Shown in pieces: positions 2,460 through 18,969 of a stretch of 18,969 nt of DNA. The first letter of the stretch is position 1. Each line of letters begins with the position of its first letter. Both the position numbers and the translations under genes were made by a program. Origin of the DNA: Bugula neritina (taxonomy: Eukaryota > Animalia > Bryozoa). The notes beneath the pieces are model-generated. The model was not told the origin of the DNA. It did no database searches and saw nothing but the letters and a program-made list of their open reading frames with translations. The DNA is taken from positions 1 through 18,969 of the forward strand of contig CAXIUT010000265.1 in NCBI GenBank assembly GCA_964035545.1, read 5' to 3'.

Positions 2460-3747
2460 TCACTGGTTGGTTGTGGTTGTGGTTGTTTTGACTGTTTTTG
2501 TAGTTGTAGTTGTTCCTGGTAGAGTTGTTGTGGTTGTTGATGTTGATGGCTGAGTCACAGTTGTTGTGCTTGGTTGAGTCACAGTTGTTGTCGTTGGTTG
2601 AGTTACTCCTGAAACAGTTGAAACTGGAGCTGTGTTGACTATTGGAACTGAAGCTGGTTGGACATTTGTGTTTGTTGTTGTTGCTGTTGTTGATGAGGGT
2701 ACAGTTGTTGGTTGAACTTCCACTGGTTGAATAGATGCTGGAGTCACACTCACTCCTGTAGTACCTGATGGAGTAGTAGTGGTAGTAGTTGATGTAGTTG
2801 AGGTAGTTGAGGTGGGTTGAGTTGTAGTGGTTGTTCCTGAAACTGGCACAGTGTTAGTATTAGTTGTTGATGTAGTAGTACCTGAAACTGGAACAGTATT
2901 AGTATTAGTAGTGGTTTCAGTTGTTGATGTAGTTGTTCCTGATACTGGTACAGTGTTGGTTGTCTCAGTGGTCGATGTAGTTGTTCCTGACACTGGGACA
3001 GTGTTTGTGTTAGTGTTAGTGTTGGTGTTGGTGTTTGTATTAGTAGTCTAAGTGGTTGAGGTGGTTGAAGTGGTGGAAGTGGTTGCTTCAGCAGCTGGAA
3101 CGCTAGCTGAAACATTAGCATTGGCATCAGCATCAACATTATTATTAATTCCTCCGATAACACCTAATCCCCAAAGTAATCCAAGAGTTAATAGGGCTAA
3201 TCCCAATAATCCGATTAATCCCCACACCCATTTGGGACAATGATCTTAAGCTGAGGCTTTAGCTGGTGCACTATATGAAGTATGAGCAACAGCTGGTTCA
3301 TGCACTGTAGTTCTTACTGGTTCTTGAGTTTTGACTGGTTCAACATAGGAAGTATGGACTGGTTCATGTCGTAATGATGAAGTTCTGACCTGCTTGACTT
3401 ATTAGTAAACTGGTTGAGGAGGTGGAACAGCCACTGGTTGTTACACTCTGAAATTAATAGATTATCTACCTATATGCATTGGAACTGGAAACAGCTTGAG
3501 TGGCATTACCGTGATTGAAACTGACTCTTGGAGGAGGAGCGTAAGAGGAAGAGGCTACATTATGAGTAGTGGAGGTGTATGCGGCTGGCGATGTGGACGT
3601 GTTGTAGGTGTTGTAGGAGGGTGAGGTGGTGGTGACGAAGGAGGGAGATGCGGCTTGGTAGTTGGATGATAGACTGTAATAGATGATGGTTTACGGTTGT
3701 CCGTATGAGGATTAGTTGTGGTTGAATCGAATTGATTGGTTGGCCAT
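2460..3747 (-). CDS. Thr-rich mucin-like single-pass membrane protein, 421 aa; join(3747..3470, 3447..2460)
   Basis: ATG at 3747. One 22-nt intron (GTAGATAATCTATTAATTTCAG, 3469-3448) restores the frame into track ORF 2460-2993. TM segment WVWGLIGLLGLALLTLGLLWGLGVIGG is followed by VPVSGTTTSTT repeats. TGA at 2462-2460. Confidence 0.85.
3448..3469 (-). other. 22-nt spliceosomal intron (GT-AG)
   Basis: GTAG...TTTCAG; its removal is required to keep the reading frame. Confidence 0.85.
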
Positions 3748-4090
3748 TGCTTTTCGAATAAATGAATAAAATATATTCAACTCAAATAAAGTCAAATTTA
3801 AAACTCTATCCAGTACTCATATCAAGAACCTTATTTTTAACATGATATATCTTCCAACTTCCTCTCTTGCTTATCACATTAACAACAAATATCACAATCA
3901 TTTGAAACAGCAAAGGCATTGATATCATAATCTCTAATGAATAAATTAAAAGCAGTTTAATGATTAGAAATAAACTATTTTTAATTTAATAATATTAATA
4001 TCATTTGAGTAGAGCTTTATATCTTTGACTAATTTATTAGTTTTAACTATTTGATTAATATCTTTGACTAATTTTAATTATAATTCAACA

Positions 4091-7061: not shown

Positions 7062-7988
7062 TCACTTTTGGGGAATAACGGCCATGTTGCAGATTCCGCA
7101 AGTTGATTTTCCACCAACAAGTCTAATGAATCCCTTTTCTCCCCAAGTAGCTCCCCAAGAGTTCTTGACCCACCAGTTGTCAGAGCTGACACCAACGAGG
7201 GTAACTCCGTGGTTAAGTCTGGTTCCGCAGTTGCTGAAAACTCCGGATTTGTAAGCTGACCAGTTGGAAGCATCAACAGCAACTGAGACGGGTTGGTTAG
7301 CAATTGAACTTGCCAATTTGTCGCAGCTCTTTATTTCAGTGTATCCTGAAACTTTGTAAGGTCCAGAATCCATCTTGCATGCTTGCTTGACAGCTTTGTA
7401 GGGGTAGTCATCTTCATGGACAATTCCCTTATCTTTAACGTATTTCAAAGCGTTGGTCATAAGACCTCCATTGCAGGCTTGGTTTCCGTATGATCCAGAG
7501 CAATCAACCAATTGGGATTCGGAGAAGCTTTCCAAAGATCCACCGTTAAGCTTGGAAAGACCTTCGAGACCTCCAGTGGTGGAGAAAGCCCAGCATGATC
7601 CGCATTGTCCTTGATTCTTGACTGGAGTGACGGCACCTTGAGAAACCCAATCAATATCGTTCATTTTAGCGCTTCCGGCATCAACGTTGCTGGCTTCACC
7701 GATGAATCCGAGGTATTGTGAAGAGAATTCTTCTTGAGTAAGGGCAGAGAACTGGTTAAGTCCTTGTTCGTAAGTTTGGGTCTTGTCGGCATTGTGAGCT
7801 TCGATTTTGGCGAAGTTTTCAAGGAAGACTCTTTCTCTGTAGGCATTTTCGAAGGTGGAGGTGTAGACAATTCCATGTCTGGCTTTCCAAGCATCGAACT
7901 CTGAGACTTTGTTGGAAGTCTGAGTGTTGAGGAGGAGGGCTGCAGCGCTGATAAAAGCGATGATGACAGCTAGTTGCTTTCCGTTCAT
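7062..7988 (-). CDS. Papain-family (C1A) cathepsin L-like cysteine protease precursor, 308 aa
   Basis: Signal peptide; I29-type prodomain (ERFNIN-like ENAYRERVFLENFAKIEAHN and GLNQF); catalytic motifs QGQCGSCWAF, NHGV and KNSWG. Confidence 0.97.
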   Translation of the reverse strand: MNGKQLAVIIAFISAAALLLNTQTSNKVSEFDAWKARHGIVYTSTFENAYRERVFLENFAKIEAHNADKTQTYEQGLNQFSALTQEEFSSQYLGFIGEASNVDAGSAKMNDIDWVSQGAVTPVKNQGQCGSCWAFSTTGGLEGLSKLNGGSLESFSESQLVDCSGSYGNQACNGGLMTNALKYVKDKGIVHEDDYPYKAVKQACKMDSGPYKVSGYTEIKSCDKLASSIANQPVSVAVDASNWSAYKSGVFSNCGTRLNHGVTLVGVSSDNWWVKNSWGATWGEKGFIRLVGGKSTCGICNMAVIPQK

Positions 7989-8616: not shown

Positions 8617-8695
8617 GGTTGGGGTTGGGGTTGGGGTTGGGGTTGGGGTTGGGGTTGGGGTTGGGGTTGGGGTTGGGGTTGGGGTTGGGGTTGGG
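8617..8695 (+). repeat. Internal telomere tract (GGGGTT)n, the right end of the 1-8695 mini-chromosome
   Basis: About 13 G4T2 repeats oriented as a right-hand telomere. Confidence 0.95.
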
Positions 8696-10432
8696 AATAG
8701 GGCGACAAAAAAATCACAATATTAGATGCCTTAATGTTTTAAAACAACCTAAGAAGTACTTTAGCATCCAGACTGGAAATAATATCGAACAGCAGAAGGA
8801 AAGAAATTTTACTATAATGCTATTACAAGAAAGTCATGCTGGCAACTACCCAATGAAGTCAAAGAATATCGAATTAAATTATAATAGAAGAGAAGGAAAG
8901 ATCGAGAATAGGGACGTGTTATAGAGTAGTAAGTATTATCTGAAGCTGAAGTTATTAGAAGGAAGCTGATGGCTTTGTTCAAGCAGAAACTTATTGGAGT
9001 GAATACAAAGTGGGATGCCTGTATGAAATTGTGTGAGGATGATGATAGATGGAAATTATTAAAGATAAGTGAAAAGAAGAAGCATTTTATTGATTATATA
9101 AATGAGTTGAAGAAGATAGGTGAGAAGTAGAAAAAGGCTAAAACTGAAGTGAATAAAATTCAATTTTTGAAGATGTTGAAATAGAATAAAAAATTGACTT
9201 CTGATTGCAAGATGCATAAAGTAGCTTATGATTTCATAGCAGATCCAAGATGGAGATTGCTTGATGATCATTAACGAGAAAATACATTTCAAAATTATAT
9301 GGATTAGTTACTTCAAAATTAAAAATAATAGGCCAATAAAGTCAAAAGATAAAATAGTTAAGCTTTCAGATTGATACTTTAAAAGGATAATATTAAGCAT
9401 AATTCAAGATGGGCAGATATCAGTAATTTCTATAAAGAAGAACCATCTTTTAAAGCTTTGCATCCTTATGATAGAATAAGTACCTTTTTGGATTATATTT
9501 TTTAATGCTAAAAACGATGGGAATAAGAACAAGCTAAAGAACGTAGATTACGTGAAAGAGTGAATCGAATTAACTATCGTAATCTTTTAAAATAAAAAAT
9601 ATCTACTGGAGATTTAAGTTACAAATCAAAATGGCGTGATTTTTTAGGAGATTTTAGAAATTAAAGAGCATTGATAGCCATGATGGACTCTTCTCAATTA
9701 GGTACCTCAGCACATTAAATATTTGAACATTTTATGTAAGATGTCCGTGAGAAGCATAAATTGATAAAAAGTTTAATAAAGCATCATTTTAAGAAAGTTA
9801 GCTTCAAAATGACTGAAACAGTTACAAGATAAGAGTTTATTTAAAAATTAAAAGATATGCCTTAGTACGTTTAACTTCCTGAACATATTAAAAATTATTT
9901 TTTTAACTATTTTTTGATGAAAATAAAAAATAAAAAATAGAATAAACAAGCTAGTGCTAAGAAGTCTTCTAAAAAGGAAAGAAAAATTATATTTAGAATT
10001 TTTTAACATCTACAAATCAAAGGATAACTTAAAAATAAGTATAGTATCGAAAGTCAAATGGATTATATTGAAAAAAATATGAAAGAAAGTGGCTTTTCAG
10101 TGACTCCTTAAACCATTTTTAAATATTATTTAGCTTTTCTTGAAAGTAATTAACAAGGTAGTAATCGAAAAGGATCAAAATAAAGATCTTCTGATAGTTC
10201 GAAAGAAGGAAAGTCTCGACATAAAAAGAGACATAAAGTCTAGGAGATAGAAGATACTAATGAATTGGCATCTTCTTTAAGAAAATTTACGATACCCTAG
10301 TTAGCTGAACTGAAGAAGCAGCAAATGAATTAATGCTAGGAGTAAGGAGAGATAAAAGATGATTCTGATGAAGTTAAAAAGAAAGTTAAGCATAAAAAGA
10401 AGAAGAGAAGTTCATCAAGTGATTCAGATTGA
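8696..10432 (+). CDS. PRP40: Prp40/PRPF40-like U1 snRNP-associated splicing factor (WW + FF domains), 5'-truncated
   Basis: The frame starts mid-WW1 (NRATKKSQYEMPE). WW2 is [26 protein letters not shown]. FF repeats include DDRWKLL, DPRWRLLDDHERENTF and GTSAHEIFEHF. The tail is K/S/E-rich with EEEGEI. TGA at 10430-10432. Confidence 0.9.
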
Positions 10433-10494: not shown

Positions 10495-10687
10495 ATAAAT
10501 ATAAAAGTAATAGGATACAAAATCACAAAGAAATTAGATGATGGTTAGGATTGTGAGAAGATCAGAAGATTCTAAGTTGAATATTCAATACGACTGAATC
10601 GTTGATTGAGTACTCATGCGTCTTCTAAAGATGACTTAGTTCGTACGCTAAGGTTATTTCATAGTATACTTCTAAGGTTATATGAGA
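10495..10687. repeat. Outer inverted repeat, left arm (shared 3' end of the micro-exon genes)
   Basis: Reverse complement of ~16026-16216 with only a few substitutions or indels. Confidence 0.9.
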
Positions 10688-12387
10688 TGATACGCATAGC
10701 GACTGAGATAAATGATTTTCATACTCTGGAGTAAATCAATGCTATACGACGGCATCGACTGACATTATTTGAAAGTTACGCTTTATCATTCAGTTTCATA
10801 CGGCTTTTTTAAAGGATCATTACACTAGGATAGAATAGGATATACAGCAGCAACTTGAATTAAAGAATAAATACTCTTAGTTATCGATATTTTACTCTCT
10901 GAATTGAATAAAATATTACCTTCACTGAGGTAAAAGAATTATTACTGGCTATGCTAGATATTTTGATACTCTTTATATTAAAAAACTTATACTTCTGAAT
11001 TTTATGACTTATACTAAGAGCATCAGCTATTTTTAAAAACTTTATACGGTTGCCTGTATTTTATTAACTTTGTACTCTTCATTAATAAAGAAAATACGTC
11101 GGCATCTAGGTTTAATAATTAAATACTCTTTAGTAAAAGGAATAATACGACTATTTTAATAAACAAATACGCTTCAATAGGATAGATGATACGGCTTCGA
11201 TCTTGATTAGATAAGAAATACGTCTTGATTAAGAATGTAGATACCAGCGTCCACTATAATAGAAAAGTCAGTACACTGAATAACTTAATAAATACAGCAC
11301 CAGCTATTACTAGACAATTTGATACCATTTCCAACTGAAAATTAAAAAGAAAATACTCTATAATAGATAAAGAAATACGTCCTCTGAAGTTAATAAGAAT
11401 ATACTGACTGAATGAAATTATTTTTACGCTTAATTATCTAAGATATACAGCTGAATAGTGAAATATTTTACTTTCTGAGATAAAATGTTTAATACTCTGG
11501 AATAAAAATAGTTGTACTCTCACTAATATTAGATATTTATTACTCTAGAATAATAAAAGCTTTACAACTACAATTATCTTATTAATACGCTTAAATTAAT
11601 AAAAATAAACGTTTTCAGTCTTAATAATCTTGTTCATACCTTTTCTGAAAGTAACAAAGTTCATACTCTTATATTAAAAGAAATAATACGACATCAGCTG
11701 TGATTAAATAACTTATACCAGCATCGGCTATAGTAAATATATTTATACACTAAATTGACTCAAATATACATCGTCTTCATAAAAAGATTAATACTCTAAA
11801 ATTATACATATTTTACGGCGAGATCTGCCTGAAAATTATTTTCAAAGTACGACTAATATTAAATCAAATCATACTCTTCATTAGTGGAATCATTACATCA
11901 CCTAAAATAAACTAAAATGTACTGTCTAAAATGAAAAATGTCATACCCTGCATTCAAATTAAATGTACAACTAGAGTTAGCTTATTTTATACACTTTGTA
12001 AATTAATAAAATACGGCAGCTTAAATAAAAAAGTCGATACCCTTAAGTAAAGGAATATTTACTTCTGACATTATGGGAAACTGTACCCTGAGATGAGAGA
12101 AATAATACATCTAAGGATGGGCTATGATATACCCTATGATAAAAAATGAGGTACAGCCTGAGTAGATAAAGATAGTACGGCTTCCTGGAATAGAAAAAAA
12201 ACTACTCCCTGGAGTAAAAGAAAGTATACGTCTGTTTAAATAAAGAAATTACTGTGAGCTTCTAAGTTTTAGATAAAAGATACTCTGAATAAAATCGATA
12301 TTACAAGGCTTTTTGAGAGAGATAATACCTCAATCCCATGGCGAGGGCGATAAGGACCAAAAGGGCGATAAGTTTGATGGATGACAT
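10614..12387 (-). CDS. Micro-exon gene B: 70 coding exons, 69 introns, secreted 106-aa protein
   Basis: Removing all ~20-22-nt GT..AG introns gives a stop-free 321-nt ORF: MSSIKLIALLVLIALAMGLSLKAHNGEAADEAAFDSDIADLANDSDAADVKKTENLMRKTLKDIGNAGALDADIEALNADSNPDALKTMKRIAASLDAVIAMQQDA*. Mean intron length is (1774-321)/69 = 21.1 nt. Confidence 0.88.
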
Positions 12388-13380
12388 AAGATTCAAAAGG
12401 AGGATAAATATATTCCAAAATAAGTGAAGAAATACTTGCTGAAAGATTATTGTCTGAGGTGTTAATTTCAACTCCTTATTTTTATCAGAGTTTATAAGAG
12501 CTCTTTTTGTGAGTTTCTAACTCTATCATCTTATACGTTAAGCTTAAACAATTGAACCAAAGAACTACACAGGCCAATAGCTTTCTTTTCATAAATGACT
12601 TGCATTTTATAAAGAACTTAACCATTATTGAGAAGAAAAAATCAATTAGAACCTTAAGAAAGACGGATAGACCTTCTCGAAGAGACTTATCTACTTTAGA
12701 CACCAAAACAAGCCTTCTGGTATTCAGATATTTGAAGATAAGTCTTTTGACTAAATGCTAAGTCACCGGAATATTTAGAAAAAACTTTTATTTTAACAAA
12801 AAGTAGTATTTTTTCTTTTAATATTCTTACTTTCTGTGTCTTTTAAAGACAGAAAAAAATTGTTAAATGATTTTTTCCCATTTTTTATTTGAAAACATCT
12901 ATTAAAGAATCTCTATTAAGAAAAAGAAAAAAATCATGAACGCGGTTAAGAATATTTCGATTTAAGGATACAAGAAAATTAGTATTATAGCTTTATTTAA
13001 AGATTATGAAGAGCTTAAAGTACTACTAGGTATTTTTTTTTTGTTTCAAAGATTCCAAAGATGACAAATAAATCGTAAAATAAAGTAAATTACTCTAATT
13101 ATTCTCTTTTAAGGATTACTTTAATGTTAAAATACTCTAAAAATGATTATTTATATATTTTTGTTTTAACATTTTTCTTTAAACTTCTCTTTTAAAGGCA
13201 CTTAAAACGAACTATGATTACGGTTCACTATATTCTAGCTTTAAAATACCTGTTAAACATAATTATTCAAAAATAAACAAGATTTTAATAGGCTAATGTC
13301 CTACTAGGTCAAGTTTTAGATATTCTAAAGTAACAAAAGTCATAAATCATAAAATAAAATGATAAAAATAGGGTTTTTTT
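12016..13380. repeat. Inner inverted repeat, left arm (1365 bp)
   Basis: Reverse complement of 13478-14842 (coordinate sum 26858, confirmed by the mirrored ORFs in the track). Spacer is 97 bp. Confidence 0.95.
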
Positions 13381-13477
13381 TGATCGAAATAAGAAGAGAA
13401 TTTCTTAATAGATGGTAATAGTTCAAAAATAAAAAGGAATACTTGATATTTATGGCATTTTAAATCCTTTTTACTTG

Positions 13478-14842
13478 AAAAAAACCCTATTTTTATCATT
13501 TTATTTTATGATTTATGACTTTTGTTACTTTAGAATATCTAAAACTTGACCTAGTAGGACATTAGCCTATTAAAATCTTGTTTATTTTTGAATAATTATG
13601 TTTAACAGGTATTTTAAAGCTAGAATATAGTGAACCGTAATCATAGTTCGTTTTAAGTGCCTTTAAAAGAGAAGTTTAAAGAAAAATGTTAAAACAAAAA
13701 TATATAAATAATCATTTTTAGAGTATTTTAACATTAAAGTAATCCTTAAAAGAGAATAATTAGAGTAATTTACTTTATTTTACGATTTATTTGTCATCTT
13801 TGGAATCTTTGAAACAAAAAAAAAATACCTAGTAGTACTTTAAGCTCTTCATAATCTTTAAATAAAGCTATAATACTAATTTTCTTGTATCCTTAAATCG
13901 AAATATTCTTAACCGCGTTCATGATTTTTTTCTTTTTCTTAATAGAGATTCTTTAATAGATGTTTTCAAATAAAAAATGGGAAAAAATCATTTAACAATT
14001 TTTTTCTGTCTTTAAAAGACACAGAAAGTAAGAATATTAAAAGAAAAAATACTACTTTTTGTTAAAATAAAAGTTTTTTCTAAATATTCCGGTGACTTAG
14101 CATTTAGTCAAAAGACTTATCTTCAAATATCTGAATACCAGAAGGCTTGTTTTGGTGTCTAAAGTAGATAAGTCTCTTCGAGAAGGTCTATCCGTCTTTC
14201 TTAAGGTTCTAATTGATTTTTTCTTCTCAATAATGGTTAAGTTCTTTATAAAATGCAAGTCATTTATGAAAAGAAAGCTATTGGCCTGTGTAGTTCTTTG
14301 GTTCAATTGTTTAAGCTTAACGTATAAGATGATAGAGTTAGAAACTCACAAAAAGAGCTCTTATAAACTCTGATAAAAATAAGGAGTTGAAATTAACACC
14401 TCAGACAATAATCTTTCAGCAAGTATTTCTTCACTTATTTTGGAATATATTTATCCTCCTTTTGAATCTTATGTCATCCATCAAACTTATCGCCCTTTTG
14501 GTCCTTATCGCCCTCGCCATGGGATTGAGGTATTATCTCTCTCAAAAAGCCTTGTAATATCGATTTTATTCAGAGTATCTTTTATCTAAAACTTAGAAGC
14601 TCACAGTAATTTCTTTATTTAAACAGACGTATACTTTCTTTTACTCCAGGGAGTAGTTTTTTTTCTATTCCAGGAAGCCGTACTATCTTTATCTACTCAG
14701 GCTGTACCTCATTTTTTATCATAGGGTATATCATAGCCCATCCTTAGATGTATTATTTCTCTCATCTCAGGGTACAGTTTCCCATAATGTCAGAAGTAAA
14801 TATTCCTTTACTTAAGGGTATCGACTTTTTTATTTAAGCTGC
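13478..14842. repeat. Inner inverted repeat, right arm (1365 bp)
   Basis: Mirror of 12016-13380. Contains ~990 bp of upstream DNA plus exons 1-13 of the micro-exon gene. Confidence 0.95.
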
Positions 14843-16099
14843 TGGTATATATCAAATAATTTTAGCCAGTATGAATTTAATAACCAAGATGTATGATATT
14901 TTTGATATTTAAGGGTATAAAATATGTTACTTTAGCCGGTATAATTTTTTATATTTTAGCCGGAGCCGTATGATTAGAATAATTGAAGGCAGCTCTCGGT
15001 ATGAGATCCTATAAAGCTAGCTGATGACGTATGATAGATGAGAAATTAGAGTATTGAAGGTTTGACTTAGATGCTGGTATTAATTAGATAAGAATAGATG
15101 GTATTATAAAAGTTATTTAGCCTAAGTATTAGTTATTTGAATATAGTGTACTAAAATAGTAATTGAAGTCGTTCTTTATTGACTAATTTCAGAGTTAAAA
15201 TAAACTTATTCAGAAGTATTTTATTTTCTACTAAGGGTTTTTTGTATTTTACTTAGTCGTAAATATCAAGTCTATTAAGTGTAAAACTATTGAAATTTTA
15301 GTTGACGAAACTGTTGATGCCGTAAAATTGTTAATTATTAAGAGTACTTAGTCAATAAAGATAGTCGTATTTATTAATTTAAACAAAGAGTATTCTATAT
15401 TTTATTTAGTTGCTGGCGTATTCTTTTAACAACAAAGGGTATATTATTATTTAGTTTTAGATTCTGACAAAGTATTTTTACTTCTAAGTGAGGCCGTATT
15501 TATATATCAAAAAAGAATGTATGATTAATTTTATTTAGGGTATATCTATTTTTGAGGAAGAAGTACTTATAAAATAACATCAGCTCGTCACAGTATATTT
15601 CAAAATAAGTCTAGGCTGTAACTTTATATTTATTTTAGAATGTGGACAGTATTGATTGATTTATCATAGCTGTCAGTATAAATTTATTGATTGAAGAGCG
15701 TATTAAATCAATCACAAAGCTGAAGTATTCATATTTCTATTAAGTTCCGTATTTGTTTTATCATATCAGTCCGTATTAAACCAATTATCTCAGAAAGTAT
15801 TCCCCTATTTACAGCAGAAAGTATAAATCATCTAAATGTAGTGAAAGTTTCATTTTGTTAATCAAGAGTATACTATCTTTAACCCAGAATGTATTAGTCT
15901 ATCTAATATAGTCGTCGTATATCATCTTTTAATTCAAGGGTATTGTCTTTGTCATTCAGCTGACCGTATTAAATCAATAACCCAGTCATCAGTATCAATC
16001 TTAGTCATCTTTAGAGGCTAGTAATTCTCATATAACCTTAGAAGTATACTATGAAATAACCTTAGCGTACGAACTAAGTCATCTTTAGAAGACGCATGA
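14471..16099 (+). CDS. Micro-exon gene A: 64 coding exons, 63 introns, secreted 102-aa protein
   Basis: Removing all ~20-23-nt GT..AG introns gives a 309-nt ORF: MSSIKLIALLVLIALAMGLSLKAHNGEAADEAAANAAGAAALADDNADA[TAA=E]FKVFDETVDAIIAGDSDKANELVTANVDTVKPEFLQKMKKFVADLIKAKQDA*. Mean intron length is (1629-309)/63 = 21.0 nt. Confidence 0.88.
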
Positions 16100-16216
16100 G
16101 TACTCAATCAACGATTCAGTCGTATTGAATATTCAACTTAGAACCTTCTGATCTTCTCACAATCCTAACCATCATCTAATTTCTTTGATTTTGTATCCTA
16201 TTATTTTTATATTTAT
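16026..16216. repeat. Outer inverted repeat, right arm
   Basis: Near-identical reverse complement of 10495-10687. Covers the last exons, the stop codon and the 3' UTR. Confidence 0.9.
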
Positions 16217-16303
16217 ATTAATTATCAATATCAATGATCAAATCTCTTAAAATAATAACAAAAAGATATGATTTAAAAAGAAATAAATAAGTAGAAAGTA
16301 AAA

Positions 16304-17593
16304 TCAATAGTATTTTTATTTTTTTTACATGAATGATTTGTCAGTAATAGTCCGATAGCTTGAAAATTTCCATCCTAGAAGCAAAGCGAGCCAGGCATAA
16401 AGAATCAATCTAACTACTTATACACTTAATAGTAGTAATTAATGACGACTTTCAGCTTAAACAAACTCGATCAGCATGATAAAAATTTGTACAAAAGCTA
16501 GATATAGAGTTCCAACAGAAGCTAAGTTATAAAAATACTTCCTAAGTTTAGTTTATTCTGGTTTTAAATGAACAATCGATCGAATTATTCCTATGATAAA
16601 CCATCCGAAAGCACACATTCGAAAGAAAAGCATTATATATGCTGGAATACCATCGAACATGTGGTATTTATCATAGGAACTATCAGTTAGCTTATTAAGT
16701 ACAGTGATGATAATGTATAGTATTACGAACATGGTAGCTACAGCAATAGACACTTCATAGTCTTCGTGGCGTTTGAAAGTAGTGGTCCAACCGAAAGACA
16801 TCACAACTAAGAGAACTATGGTAATTGAGTCTGAAAGTGAGTGTAGAAGAAGGTACATAACATCAAAAAAGTTATAGATTCTTCCATTGGTGAAGGCATA
16901 GATGATGTGTCCGCAATACATGAATGCTAATGAGAGTGTTCCAGTCCAGATACTTATTTTTAGCAGATATTTGGTCCAATTTTATTCCTCTTCTGGTTGT
17001 TTTTTTAACAGATAGAGTACTATGAGGTGTAGGATGAGAATGAGAGGTATGATCCAATCGTAGTAATGTTAGTTACCTGTGGAATGTTGGTTGTTGTTGA
17101 TGACATCGAGTTCTATTTCTATTTTGTTTTGTTTTCCGAATCCTGATCTGAGTAGAGATGATGAGCAATCTTTGAAGATGAAGTAGTAGGTTTATTTTTA
17201 TGTGATAGTGAAACTTGATTCTGTTACTGTTTGAAAGTTAGTATTTTTGTGAAGAGTGAAAGGTAATCTTAACTATTTTACTGTTTTTTATGCCTAAATT
17301 TATGGAGGATAAGTTTCTGAGTTGCATTTGTTTTAGAGTTAATATGACCAGAGATGACTTGGTACTGCTATGATTTCAAGGGAGTAGTACTATGCTTGTG
17401 ATGATTTGAGTAGGAGATTGATATAGAGGGAGAGATCTAGCTTTTATGGATGAAGAGTTGAACGACCGATGTAGTGCCATCCTTTATTATTTTTTAGTTT
17501 TGGGCTAGTGAGAGTGCTTTAGAAGATTTTAGAAGTGCTTAAAACTAGAAGATGCAAAAAGATTAATACTACTGAAAGATTTATGAGGTGCAT
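16304..17593 (-). CDS. GPR180/TMEM145-like (intimal-thickness receptor family) multi-pass membrane protein, 429 aa
   Basis: ATG 17593 is in frame with track ORF 16553-16921 and runs to TGA 16306-16304. It has a signal peptide, a lumenal domain (YYFIFKDC) and a multi-TM region with LLVVMSFGWT and YHMFDGIPAY motifs recalled for this family. Confidence 0.75.
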
Positions 17594-17662
17594 GATTGAT
17601 TCTATATTATAAATATCAATATTAAATTGAAGTATTAGAGAAACAACTATTTTAATTAATGT

Positions 17663-18878
17663 GATAATGATGATATAAAGTATTGATTGATTGAAGATAG
17701 ATAGTTGGTATATCTCTTAATAACTATATTATTTCTTGATACAACTGACAATACTGAATGATAATGATGATAAAAGTATTGATTGATTGAAGATAGATAG
17801 TTGGTATATCTCTTAATAACTATATTATTTCTTGATACAACTGACAATACTGAATGATAATGATGATAAAAGTATTGATTGATTGAAGATAGATAGTTGG
17901 TATATCTCTTAATAACTATATTATTTCTTGATACAACTGACAATACTGAATGATAATGATGATAAAAGTATTGATTGATTGAAGATAGATAGTTGGTATA
18001 TCTCTTAATAACTATATTATTTCTTGATACAACTGACAATACTGAATGATAATGATGATAAAAGTATTGATTGATTGAAGATAGATAGTTGGTATATCTC
18101 TTAATAACTATATTATTTCTTGATACAACTGACAATACTGAATGATAATGATGATAAAAGTATTGATTGATTGAAGATAGATAGTTGGTATATCTCTTAA
18201 TAACTATATTATTTCTTGATACAACTGACAATACTGAATGATAATGATGATAAAAGTATTGATTGATTGAAGATAGATAGTTGGTATATCTCTTAATAAC
18301 TATATTATTTCTTGATACAACTGACAATACTGAATGATAATGATGATAAAAGTATTGATTGATTGAAGATAGATAGTTGGTATATCTCTTAATAACTATA
18401 TTATTTCTTGATACAACTGACAATACTGAATGATAATGATGATAAAAGTATTGATTGATTGAAGATAGATAGTTGGTATATCTCTTAATAACTATATTAT
18501 TTCTTGATACAACTGACAATACTGAATGATAATGATGATAAAAGTATTGATTGATTGAAGATAGATAGTTGGTATATCTCTTAATAACTATATTATTTCT
18601 TGATACAACTGACAATACTGAATGATAATGATGATAAAAGTATTGATTGATTGAAGATAGATAGTTGGTATATCTCTTAATAACTATATTATTTCTTGAT
18701 ACAACTGACAATACTGAATGATAATGATGATAAAAGTATTGATTGATTGAAGATAGATAGTTGGTATATCTCTTAATAACTATATTATTTCTTGATACAA
18801 CTGACAATACTGAATGATAATGATGATAAAAGTATTGATTGATTGAAGATAGATAGTTGGTATATCTCTTAATAACTA
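17663..18878 (+). repeat. Subtelomeric 96-bp tandem array, ~12.7 near-identical copies
   Basis: Period is 96 (sequence lines 17701, 18181 and 18661 are identical). The array runs directly into the telomere. Confidence 0.97.
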
Positions 18879-18969
18879 GGGGTTGGGGTTGGGGTTGGGG
18901 TTGGGGTTGGGGTTGGGGTTGGGGTTGGGGTTGGGGTTGGGGTTGGGGTTGGGTGGGGTTGGGGTTGGG
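18879..18969 (+). repeat. Right telomere (GGGGTT)n
   Basis: G4T2 repeats to the end of the window. Confidence 0.98.

What the first reader, a model, noticed from the sequence alone, without database searches (positions are those of the whole stretch)
10614..16099. Intron phase code: only phase 0 and 1 after intron 1, and every 1-nt exon is a first codon position
Seen: in my parse, only the shared first intron (AG|C) is phase 2. All other coding introns in both genes fall between codons or after the first base. Many codons are written as |N|NN| (|T|TC|, |A|AA|, |G|TC|, |C|TT|, |A|TC|). This near-total absence of phase 2 across more than 110 distinct introns is very unlikely by chance and independently supports the reading frame. 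Inference: intron gain or retention here is tied to codon structure. It may permit codon-level modular exchange or skipping, or reflect selection on the outcome of mis-splicing.
Basis: partly seen in the sequence, partly recalled or inferred. Interest (0 to 1): 0.8.

Follow-up and report, generated by a model that had tools for sequence, protein, structure and literature searches.

The report
Micro-intron arrays that avoid phase 2
Two small secreted-protein genes of a ciliate are cut by 63 and 69 tiny (20-23 nt) introns into exons as short as one base, RNA shows the introns are really spliced, and after the first intron every one lies between codons or after the first codon base, never after the second, which flanking bases and stop-codon quality control do not explain.

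Summary
A parse that used no reading-frame information gives 63 coding introns in the + strand gene and 69 in the - strand gene (20-23 nt, GTA..AG). Both reach the same shared TGA in frame. Phases are 27/35/1 and 32/36/1 for phase 0/1/2, and the single phase-2 intron is the shared first one. All 42 one-base exons are first codon positions.

RNA contigs from four public runs leave the genome exactly at the first donor. They continue with the predicted join of exons 2-10, and a 3' contig confirms the last four junctions.

None of 159 distinct phase-2 sites carries an intron, against 124 of 318 phase-0/1 sites (Fisher 8e-27). A flanking-base model predicts about 75 phase-2 introns. Stop-codon (NMD-type) policing is not supported.

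My best explanation, at moderate confidence, is inheritance. The array would have grown by in-frame duplication of a codon split 1+2, then lost introns mainly next to G. A codon-linked selective or generative rule is not excluded.

First-stage notes, which I did not check, report the same 1+2 rule on other DNA of this genome. I found no description of such arrays in the paper library.

The parts
14471..16099 (+).
   Evidence: Frame-blind parse. RNA contigs confirm introns 1-9 and 62-65.
10614..12387 (-).
   Evidence: Frame-blind parse. Its 5' and 3' ends are identical or 99% identical to the + strand gene. The 3' RNA contig of run X22 carries this gene's AAT variant.
14471..14529 (+). Exon 1 (mirror copy 12387-12329): 59 nt, a hydrophobic signal-peptide-like N-terminus with no intron
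   Evidence: Translation. 17.7 introns are expected at the array's occupancy and none is seen (P 9e-12). RNA contigs match it and stop matching at 14529.
14530..14549 (+). Shared first intron (mirror 12328-12309), 20 nt, the only phase-2 intron (AG|C)
   Evidence: Its junction is seen in RNA contigs of four runs.
14550..16088 (+). Micro-intron array of the + gene: introns 2-63, only phases 0 and 1, exons of 1-20 nt. Includes a saturated |N|NN| run at 15126-15301.
10625..12308 (-). Micro-intron array of the - gene: introns 2-69, only phases 0 and 1
14574..14574 (+). One-base exon A (first base of an AAA codon), confirmed in RNA
   Evidence: for the coordinates. loose-end consensus of run X21 (CCTT-A-AAGCTCACA...).
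14725..14725 (+). One-base exon G (first base of a GAT codon), confirmed in RNA
   Evidence...GCT-G-A
16100..16141 (+). Two 20-nt introns in the 3' UTR (16100-16119, 16122-16141; mirror 10613-10594, 10591-10572), separated by a 2-nt exon TC. The first starts right after the TGA. The exon length here would give 'phase 2' if the frame went on.
   Evidence: Both are spliced in RNA (run X22 loose end before 16145).
12003..14855 (.). Perfect palindrome (arms 12003-13380 and 13478-14855, 97-nt centre). It holds the two divergent promoter regions, both copies of exon 1 and the first 13 introns of each gene.
16026..16187 (.). Outer inverted repeat (with 10526-10687), 99% identical: the last introns, stop codon and 3' UTR of both genes. 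Between the inner and outer repeats the two genes are unalignable as DNA.

Best explanation
Shown: these are real spliceosomal-type micro-introns. They have GTA..AG ends, are 20-23 nt long and carry an A seven bases before the 3' end. They are spliced out of the mRNAs of two divergently transcribed paralogous genes for small acidic secreted proteins. Within the coding part after intron 1 they occupy only phases 0 and 1. This rule works at the level of codons, not of neighbouring bases. Inferred: the rule is most likely inherited rather than functional. The array would have grown by local, in-frame (multiple-of-3) tandem duplication of a founder module, one codon split as N | intron | NN | intron. 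Any duplication that keeps the reading frame also keeps the phase of every copied intron. An array built this way can therefore only ever contain the founder's two phases, however far the sequences later diverge. Later, introns were lost one by one, preferentially where a G flanks the splice site. There the G...G microhomology allows precise deletion, and the exons fused into the present 3-20 nt exons. A very strict intron-length ruler (20-23 nt) would let the spliceosome define each intron on its own, so that one-base exons are no obstacle.
For: Real introns: RNA contigs of four runs stop matching at 14529. In X21 they continue exactly with the predicted join of exons 2-10, and an X22 contig shows the last four junctions. 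A at -7 occurs in 84 of 117 introns, and introns are 24% G+C against 48% for exons. The rule is real and not base-driven. Points for inheritance follow. (1) The array has sharp edges: exon 1 has no intron where 17.7 are expected, and there are no candidates in the 5' UTR. (2) The phase-2 first intron, outside the array, is spliced and conserved in RNA variants from four runs, so phase 2 is not forbidden mechanically. (3) Phase-0 and phase-1 introns differ in sequence at +7 and -3 (P about 4e-4 each), whatever their length or neighbouring exon size. Phase can be predicted from intron sequence alone at 0.64 against 0.51 (P 0.013). This is as expected for two founder lineages. (4) Saturated |N|NN| runs of up to 7 micro-exons are present. 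(5) There is a trace of a 24-nt tandem duplication of intron plus 2-nt exon at 10648-10693. (6) G-flanked sites are occupied at 43/179 against 81/139 for the others (P 6e-10). Only 20/159 phase-2 sites are G-flanked, so phase-2 introns, had they existed, should have survived best. (7) Unverified first-stage notes report fully saturated 1/2-nt arrays and uniform-phase exon cassettes elsewhere in this genome.
Against: There is no significant sequence trace of duplication. Intron-to-intron similarity only modestly exceeds shuffles. The two partners of a doublet are not alike. The spliced CDS has no internal repeat beyond a codon-shuffled null. The class signature is weak and could reflect splicing context. 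The two paralogs differ at about 43 aligned intron positions, which needs many independent losses. The mature protein is not a simple repeat. If unrelated gene families in this genome obey the same rule, one frozen accident becomes implausible. The introns on the two sides of codon position 1 co-occur far more often than expected (odds ratio 12 and 3.7), which this model does not predict.
Confidence: 0.4

Rival explanations
1. Translation-linked selection. Introns arise at all three phases, but phase-2 introns in these arrays are purged because their mis-spliced or unspliced products are more harmful or less well policed.
For: The rule is codon-level and not explained by flanking bases. It holds through 130 coding junctions. 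The very first exon after the stop codon (TC, 2 nt after a codon boundary) has a length class never seen in 59 coding cases. The two paralogs differ at many intron positions yet both obey the rule. A survey reports that later introns of peritrich genes avoid phase 2 (PMC13685798).
Against: 65 of 71 21-nt introns give no premature TGA when retained, and 21 nt (a multiple of 3) is the commonest length. The phase-1 register has the fewest in-frame TGA (4 of 117 introns, against 20 and 15) and is still the most used. Frameshift outcomes of exon skipping or retention do not depend on phase. Isolating the wobble base (phases 0 and 2) would be the more robust layout. The phase-2 first intron is tolerated. 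The UTR evidence is a single case.
Confidence: 0.2
2. A codon-aware generative or functional system. The first codon base (1-nt exon) and the last two bases (2-nt exon) would be deliberately separate modules. Introns would be installed in pairs around codon position 1, and alternative joining would assemble new codons to diversify a secreted peptide.
For: Introns on both sides of codon position 1 co-occur strongly (odds ratio 12 for G-initial and 3.7 for other codons), while those on both sides of the 2-nt remainder do not. A hypervariable middle lies between homogenised gene ends. Several expressed sequence variants appear in RNA runs.
Against: The RNA contigs show complete, ordinary splicing, and their variants differ by in-frame substitutions, as paralogs or alleles do. 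No known process reads codons while placing introns. The narrow intron length argues against frequent skipping.
Confidence: 0.1
3. Artefact: the phase pattern comes from a biased or wrong parse, or the 'introns' are not spliced.
For: Only 13 of 136 junctions are directly seen in RNA. 22 introns have some alternative GT..AG.
Against: The parse used no frame information. Any junction error that is not a multiple of 3 would rotate all downstream phases and create phase-2 calls, and none is seen. Both genes end in frame at the shared stop. The chosen frame is the only one open: TGA counts per frame are 1 (the stop itself), 3, 8 and 1, 2, 11. G is the first base of about half of the codons in this frame. 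The RNA matches.
Confidence: 0.02

Closest known systems
Tiny spliceosomal introns of ciliates: Paramecium at 20-33 nt and peritrichs with similarly narrow lengths (PMC13685798); Stentor and Blepharisma at 15 nt
   Same: GT..AG ends, a very narrow length distribution, A+T-rich, and each intron presumably defined on its own.
   Different: Density is about one intron per 4 coding bases, against a few per gene. Exons go down to 1 nt. A multiple-of-3 length (21 nt) is the commonest, without premature stops, whereas 3n introns are reported as generally disfavoured in non-heterotrich ciliates. One phase is completely excluded.
Single-nucleotide exons reported as isolated cases: Arabidopsis (PMC4674806) and Fusarium CYP621A (PMC12940212)
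   Same: A 1-nt exon between two canonical introns, supported by RNA.
   Different: Those are single curiosities between ordinary-sized introns. Here there are 42 in two genes, always at codon position 1, between 20-23 nt introns.
General intron phase bias of eukaryotes (phase 0 > 1 > 2; proto-splice-site and exon-shuffling explanations). This is from my own knowledge. The ancestral ciliate figure of about 48% phase 0 is from PMC13685798.
   Same: Non-uniform use of the three phases, with phase 2 the rarest.
   Different: The known bias is mild, with phase 2 around a fifth to a third. Here it is 0 of 159 sites where a flanking-base model expects about 75.
Phase and premature-stop coupling of 15-nt introns in heterotrich ciliates (PMC13685798), and translational control of intron splicing in Paramecium (Jaillon et al. 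2008, as cited there)
   Same: Tiny introns whose phase and length distribution is shaped at the level of the codon.
   Different: There the disfavoured class is phase-1 3n introns, because they rarely create stops. Here phase 1 is the commonest, 3n introns dominate and almost none creates a stop.
Tandem exon-plus-intron duplication giving uniform-phase cassettes (symmetric exons). LRR cassettes with phase-1 introns are noted elsewhere in this genome (unverified notes).
   Same: Frame-preserving duplication passes on intron phase, which is the proposed source of the rule.
   Different: The module here would be a single codon with two introns, and no sequence similarity between copies is left.
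Recursive splicing at zero-length exons, and fungal twin introns (stwintrons). From my own knowledge.
   Same: Neighbouring introns removed by separate, consecutive splicing reactions with almost no exon between them.
   Different: Here a real exon of at least 1 nt is kept in the mRNA each time. No abutting AG|GT pair occurs in the parse.

Membership tests
Spliceosomal GT-AG tiny introns (ciliate type) | GT at the 5' end and AG at the 3' end | tested here: met
   All 136 parsed introns. 112 of 117 distinct coding introns start with GTA.
Spliceosomal GT-AG tiny introns (ciliate type) | Narrow length distribution | tested here: met
   Lengths of 20, 21, 22 and 23 nt only, with mode 21.
Spliceosomal GT-AG tiny introns (ciliate type) | Branch-site-like conserved A near the 3' end | tested here: met
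   A at position -7 in 84 of 117 introns. The branch point itself was not mapped.
Spliceosomal GT-AG tiny introns (ciliate type) | Absent from mature RNA | tested here: met
   13 junctions are seen spliced in RNA contigs. The other 123 are inferred.
Introns policed by premature stop codons (Paramecium / heterotrich model) | Under-representation of lengths divisible by 3 | tested here: not met
   21 nt is the commonest length: 71 of 134 introns.
Introns policed by premature stop codons (Paramecium / heterotrich model) | A retained 3n intron creates an in-frame stop | tested here: not met
   Only 6 of 71 21-nt introns contain an in-frame TGA.
Single-nucleotide exons | A 1-nt exon between two canonical introns, supported by RNA | tested here: met
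   Exons at 14574 (A), 14725 (G) and 16066 (C) lie inside RNA-confirmed joins. The other one-base exons are inferred.
Uniform-phase cassettes from tandem duplication | Restricted intron phases across the array | tested here: met
   Only phases 0 and 1.
Uniform-phase cassettes from tandem duplication | Detectable sequence similarity between repeat units | tested here: not met
   No significant intron, doublet or codon-level repeat. There is only one weak 24-nt trace and weak class signatures.
Recursive splicing / twin introns | A splice site regenerated at an AG|GT junction with a zero-length exon, or one intron nested in another | tested here: not met
   Every pair of neighbouring introns is separated by at least 1 exonic base that is kept in the RNA.
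Peritrich nuclear code (UAA/UAG = Glu) | TAA and TAG are sense codons and TGA is the only stop | tested here: met
   TGA-free reading frames of 432-724 codons carry 19-43 in-frame TAA/TAG.
Peritrich nuclear code (UAA/UAG = Glu) | TAA/TAG align with glutamate in conserved proteins | not tested
   Taken from an unverified first-stage note. It does not affect the phase result.

The most novel reading that the evidence does not exclude
The exclusion of phase 2 is an active, codon-linked rule of this lineage rather than a relic. Either micro-introns are generated or kept in pairs around the first codon base by a process coupled to the reading frame, or the 1+2 split is used to assemble or police codons at the RNA level. 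The excess of intron pairs flanking codon position 1, the failure of base context and of stop-codon policing to explain the rule, and the break of the rule right after the stop codon leave this open.
Probability: 0.2. Interest if true: 0.95.

Novelty: new variant of a known kind. Interest (0 to 1): 0.8.

Why it matters
Intron phase bias has been argued over for decades with weak statistical signals spread over whole genomes. Here two genes give an all-or-none signal: 0 of 159 sites against 124 of 318. The system is one where the spliceosome demonstrably joins one-base exons dozens of times per transcript.

If the rule is a relic of duplication, these arrays are the cleanest example yet that phase distributions can be frozen history. 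They also show how intron-saturated genes are born and decay, including intron loss that depends on a flanking G.

If the rule is selective or generative, it points to an unknown coupling between splicing and the reading frame.

Either way there is a practical consequence. Standard gene finders and read aligners cannot see such genes, so secreted-peptide families of this kind are probably missing from ciliate annotations.

Tried and rejected
1. Flanking-base explanation. A logistic model of bases -2..+2 and a (-1,+1) table, both trained on phase-0/1 sites, predict 75 and 85 introns at phase-2 sites. None is seen.

2. Stop-codon (NMD-type) policing. Rejected for the reasons.

3. Recent tandem duplication. 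Intron all-against-all comparison, doublet partners, in-frame self-comparison of the CDS and Tandem Repeats Finder give at most weak traces.

4. Coupling of intron length to neighbouring exon length. None found.

5. Parse ambiguity. Few alternatives exist and most have atypical lengths.

6. Looking for the spliced form or for relatives in public collections.
- The spliced-junction 21-mer found nothing in JGI metagenomes.
- An exon-1 20-mer gave one chance hit in a G+C-rich bacterial contig, L001.
- An exon-1 22-mer found nothing in GTDB genomes or IMG/VR.
- A generic three-intron pattern in IMG/VR gave 54 single chance hits in phage coding DNA, with no array.

7. Phases of ordinary introns in the same window. 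Not possible. The cathepsin L-like gene is a single uninterrupted ORF, and the other long reading frames show no frame breaks. Intron-model hits outside the arrays are few (38, of which 12 lie in the 96-bp repeat) and unverified.

8. Homology, family and structure searches of the two spliced proteins were left out.

9. Literature. No paper in the held library describes tandem one-base exons or micro-intron arrays in ciliates.


Full report
SETTING

The window is a complete small macronuclear chromosome of a ciliate. It has C4A2 repeats at 1-63 and G4T2 repeats at 18879-18969, and a further G4T2 tract at 8617-8702. TGA is the only stop. Reading frames of 432-724 codons are free of TGA yet carry 19-43 in-frame TAA/TAG. 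An unverified first-stage note says both codons mean glutamate, which is the peritrich code. I used that table for translation, and nothing below depends on it.

The finding spans two genes that are transcribed away from each other.
- They sit around a perfect 1378-nt palindrome (arms 12003-13380 and 13478-14855).
- An outer 162-nt inverted repeat (10526-10687 and 16026-16187) covers their 3' ends.
- Between these repeats the two genes cannot be aligned as DNA.

CHECK OF THE OBSERVATION

I parsed both strands with a dynamic program that knows only GT..AG ends, intron length and a per-base exon cost. It has no frame information.

- + strand gene: ATG at 14471, a 59-nt first exon, 63 coding introns, TGA ending at 16099.
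- - strand gene: ATG at 12387, 69 coding introns, TGA ending at 10614.
- All introns are 20-23 nt, with a mode of 21.
- Phases 0/1/2 are 27/35/1 and 32/36/1.
- The only phase-2 intron is the shared first one (AG|C).
- There are 117 distinct coding intron sequences.
- The 17 + 25 one-base exons are all codon position 1, and the 10 + 12 two-base exons are all positions 2-3. This follows automatically from the phase rule.

The parse is robust, for five reasons.
- 110 of 132 introns have no alternative GT..AG of 18-25 nt between their neighbours.
- Any junction error that is not a multiple of 3 would rotate every downstream phase, and no such rotation is seen.
- The two divergent middles both arrive in frame at the shared stop.
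- The chosen frame is the only open one. TGA counts per frame are 1 (the stop itself), 3, 8 and 1, 2, 11.
- The frame has the usual coding periodicity, with G as the first base of about half of the codons.

ARE THE INTRONS REAL?

Yes. No RNA run holds the genomic form. Several RNA-type runs hold part of exon 1. I laid four of them, from four studies, on 14300-17600; one is on record as RNA-Seq. Each gave a contig that matches exon 1 and stops matching exactly at 14529, the predicted first donor.

In run X21 the contig continues with CCTTAAAGCTCACAACGGAGAAGCCGCTGA. This is letter for letter the predicted join of exons 2 to 10 (CCTT, A, AAGCTCACA, AC, GGA, GAAGCC, GCT, G, A...). It spans nine introns and two one-base exons (one search gives the coordinates).

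The other three runs show variants that differ by in-frame substitutions only, as paralogs or alleles would.

A second X22 contig ends ...ACAAGACGCATGATCAAT before 16145. This confirms the last two coding introns and two further introns in the 3' UTR.

The contigs run on for 147 and 255 letters without matching anything else in the 3.3 kb. That is expected if the rest of the mRNA is made of exons of 20 nt or less.

The same runs give no cover of the introns or of the neighbouring gene, so they are not genomic DNA. Thirteen junctions are therefore shown directly, and the remaining 123 are inferred by the same rules.

The introns also have a conserved A seven bases before the 3' end (84/117). 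They are 24% G+C, against 48% for the exons.

IS IT MORE THAN CHANCE, AND IS IT A BASE-CONTEXT EFFECT?

- If phases were even and independent, the chance that 116 distinct introns all avoid phase 2 would be about 4e-21.
- Shuffling the order of the observed exon lengths gives 20-22 phase-2 junctions per gene on average, and never zero in 100,000 trials.
- At the level of sites in the mature mRNA, 0 of 159 distinct phase-2 sites carry an intron, against 124 of 318 phase-0/1 sites (Fisher 8e-27).
- The one clear base effect is avoidance of G next to the splice site: occupancy is 43/179 for G-flanked sites against 81/139 for the others (P 6e-10).
- Only 20 of 159 phase-2 sites are G-flanked, so a context model trained on phase-0/1 sites predicts about 75 introns there.

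The rule is therefore about codons, not about neighbouring bases.

WHAT ELSE THE ANATOMY SHOWS

(a) The array has sharp edges. Exon 1 has no intron where 17.7 would be expected at the array's occupancy (P 9e-12). The 5' UTR has no candidates.

(b) Straight after the TGA there are two more introns separated by a 2-nt exon. After a codon boundary, an exon length of 2 mod 3 is never seen among 59 coding cases, yet it is the first thing seen in the UTR. This is a single case.

(c) Premature-stop policing does not apply. 21 nt is the commonest length. 65 of 71 21-nt introns would read through to the normal stop if retained. The phase-1 register has the fewest in-frame TGA.

(d) Phase-0 and phase-1 introns differ in sequence. 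A at +7 is typical of phase 1, and A at -3 is typical of phase 0, each at P about 4e-4. This holds regardless of intron length or neighbouring exon size. Phase can be predicted from intron sequence alone at 0.64 against 0.51 for permuted labels (P 0.013).

(e) Introns on the two sides of codon position 1 co-occur much more than expected (odds ratio 12 in G-initial codons and 3.7 in the others). Introns on the two sides of the two-base remainder do not. The intron, one base, intron doublet is thus a preferred unit.

(f) Otherwise the introns are barely alike, doublet partners are not alike, and the spliced CDS has no significant internal repeat. One weak 24-nt tandem trace lies at 10648-10693.

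(g) The two proteins are 102 and 106 aa. Each has a hydrophobic N-terminus encoded by exon 1, and a mature part with pI about 4.3 that is rich in Ala and Asp. They share 56 identities over 110 aligned columns. In the divergent middle about 24 intron positions are shared and about 43 differ.

HOW IT MOST LIKELY WORKS

Shown:
- Each 20-23 nt intron is removed precisely, even with a single base of exon beside it.
- Placement obeys a codon-level rule.

Inferred, step 1. The very narrow length window lets each intron be defined on its own. Pairing a donor with the next intron's acceptor, about 43 nt away, would then be disfavoured, and one-base exons would be harmless.

Inferred, step 2. The phase rule is probably inherited. 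Any duplication inside a coding region that survives must add a multiple of 3 exonic bases, and it then copies each intron into the same phase. An array grown by such duplications from one codon split 1+2 can only contain phases 0 and 1.

This fits several observations:
- the sharp edges of the array;
- the tolerated phase-2 intron just outside it;
- the two intron classes;
- the saturated |N|NN| runs (up to seven micro-exons at 15126-15301);
- the notes of fully saturated arrays and uniform-phase cassettes elsewhere in the genome (unverified).

Inferred, step 3. The G effect fits later precise intron loss through G...G microhomology between exon and intron ends. Microhomology-mediated intron loss has been proposed in the literature; I cite this from my own knowledge. 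By that logic phase-2 introns would have been the most stable, so they most likely never existed.

I give this whole explanation about 0.4. No sequence trace of the duplications remains, the doublet excess is not predicted, and the same rule in unrelated families would strain a frozen accident.

RIVALS

- Translation-linked selection (0.2). It is favoured by the codon-level nature of the rule and by the break after the stop codon. It lacks any asymmetry that would single out phase 2.
- A codon-aware generative or diversifying system (0.1). It is favoured by the doublet excess and by the hypervariable middle between homogenised ends. The RNA contigs, however, show only full splicing.
- Artefact (0.02).
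- The remaining probability is for something I have not thought of.

COMPARISON WITH WHAT IS KNOWN

Tiny introns with narrow lengths are standard in Paramecium and in peritrichs, and 15-nt introns in heterotrichs (PMC13685798). Single one-base exons are published as isolated curiosities in Arabidopsis (PMC4674806) and Fusarium (PMC12940212). Mild phase bias is universal.

The 2026 survey reports roughly even phases in most non-heterotrich ciliates. It also says that in peritrichs later introns shift towards phase 1 and away from phase 2, which may be a genome-wide shadow of genes like these.

I found no paper describing tandem micro-intron arrays, serial one-base exons or the exclusion of a phase. 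That covers only the held library.

The same 1+2 rule was noted by first-stage readers on other DNA of this genome (s1-435088, s1-433999, s1-435032). I could not check those.

VERDICT

I rate it as a new variant of a known kind (spliceosomal introns and phase bias, taken to an extreme not described before), with interest 0.8.

Noticed in passing
window 8617-8702: An internal G4T2 telomere tract in the same orientation as the right-end telomere. It is followed by unique sequence with no C4A2 partner. This could be an alternative chromosome end (an 8.7-kb isoform) or an assembly join.
   Followed up: no
window 12003-14855 and 10526-10687 / 16026-16187: The two genes share 100% and 99% identical ends: promoter region, exon 1 and the first 13 introns at one end; the last introns, stop and 3' UTR at the other. 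Their middles are unalignable as DNA. This gives a conserved-ends, hypervariable-middle layout, like secreted peptide families under diversification or with cassette exchange.
   Followed up: partly
window 14530-16088 and 10625-12308: 21 nt, a multiple of 3, is the commonest intron length, and 65 of 71 such introns carry no in-frame TGA. This is the opposite of the 3n depletion reported for most non-heterotrich ciliates (PMC13685798).
   Followed up: partly
window 14550-16088 and 10625-12308: Introns avoid sites flanked by G: occupancy is 24% against 58%. This is the reverse of the usual AG|G and G|GT exon preferences and fits precise intron loss through G...G microhomology.
   Followed up: partly
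window 14550-16088 and 10625-12308: Introns on both sides of codon position 1 co-occur far more than expected (odds ratio 12 and 3.7). Introns on both sides of the 2-nt remainder do not. This is unexplained.
   Followed up: partly
window 16100-16141 (mirror 10572-10613): An intron begins immediately after the stop codon and a second follows 2 nt later. Both are spliced in RNA.
   Followed up: partly
window 17662-18878: A 96-bp subtelomeric tandem repeat with 12.7 nearly identical copies. There is also a 15-bp repeat at 64-131 next to the left telomere.
   Followed up: no
window 7065-7988 (- strand): An intron-free cathepsin L-like cysteine protease gene (Inhibitor_I29 plus Peptidase_C1, E 8e-59) with no TAA/TAG codons. 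It contrasts with the 132 coding introns in the two small genes on the same chromosome.
   Followed up: partly
window 2463-3776 (- strand): A Thr/Pro-rich, mucin-like reading frame with short tandem repeats and a hydrophobic segment. It was not characterised.
   Followed up: no
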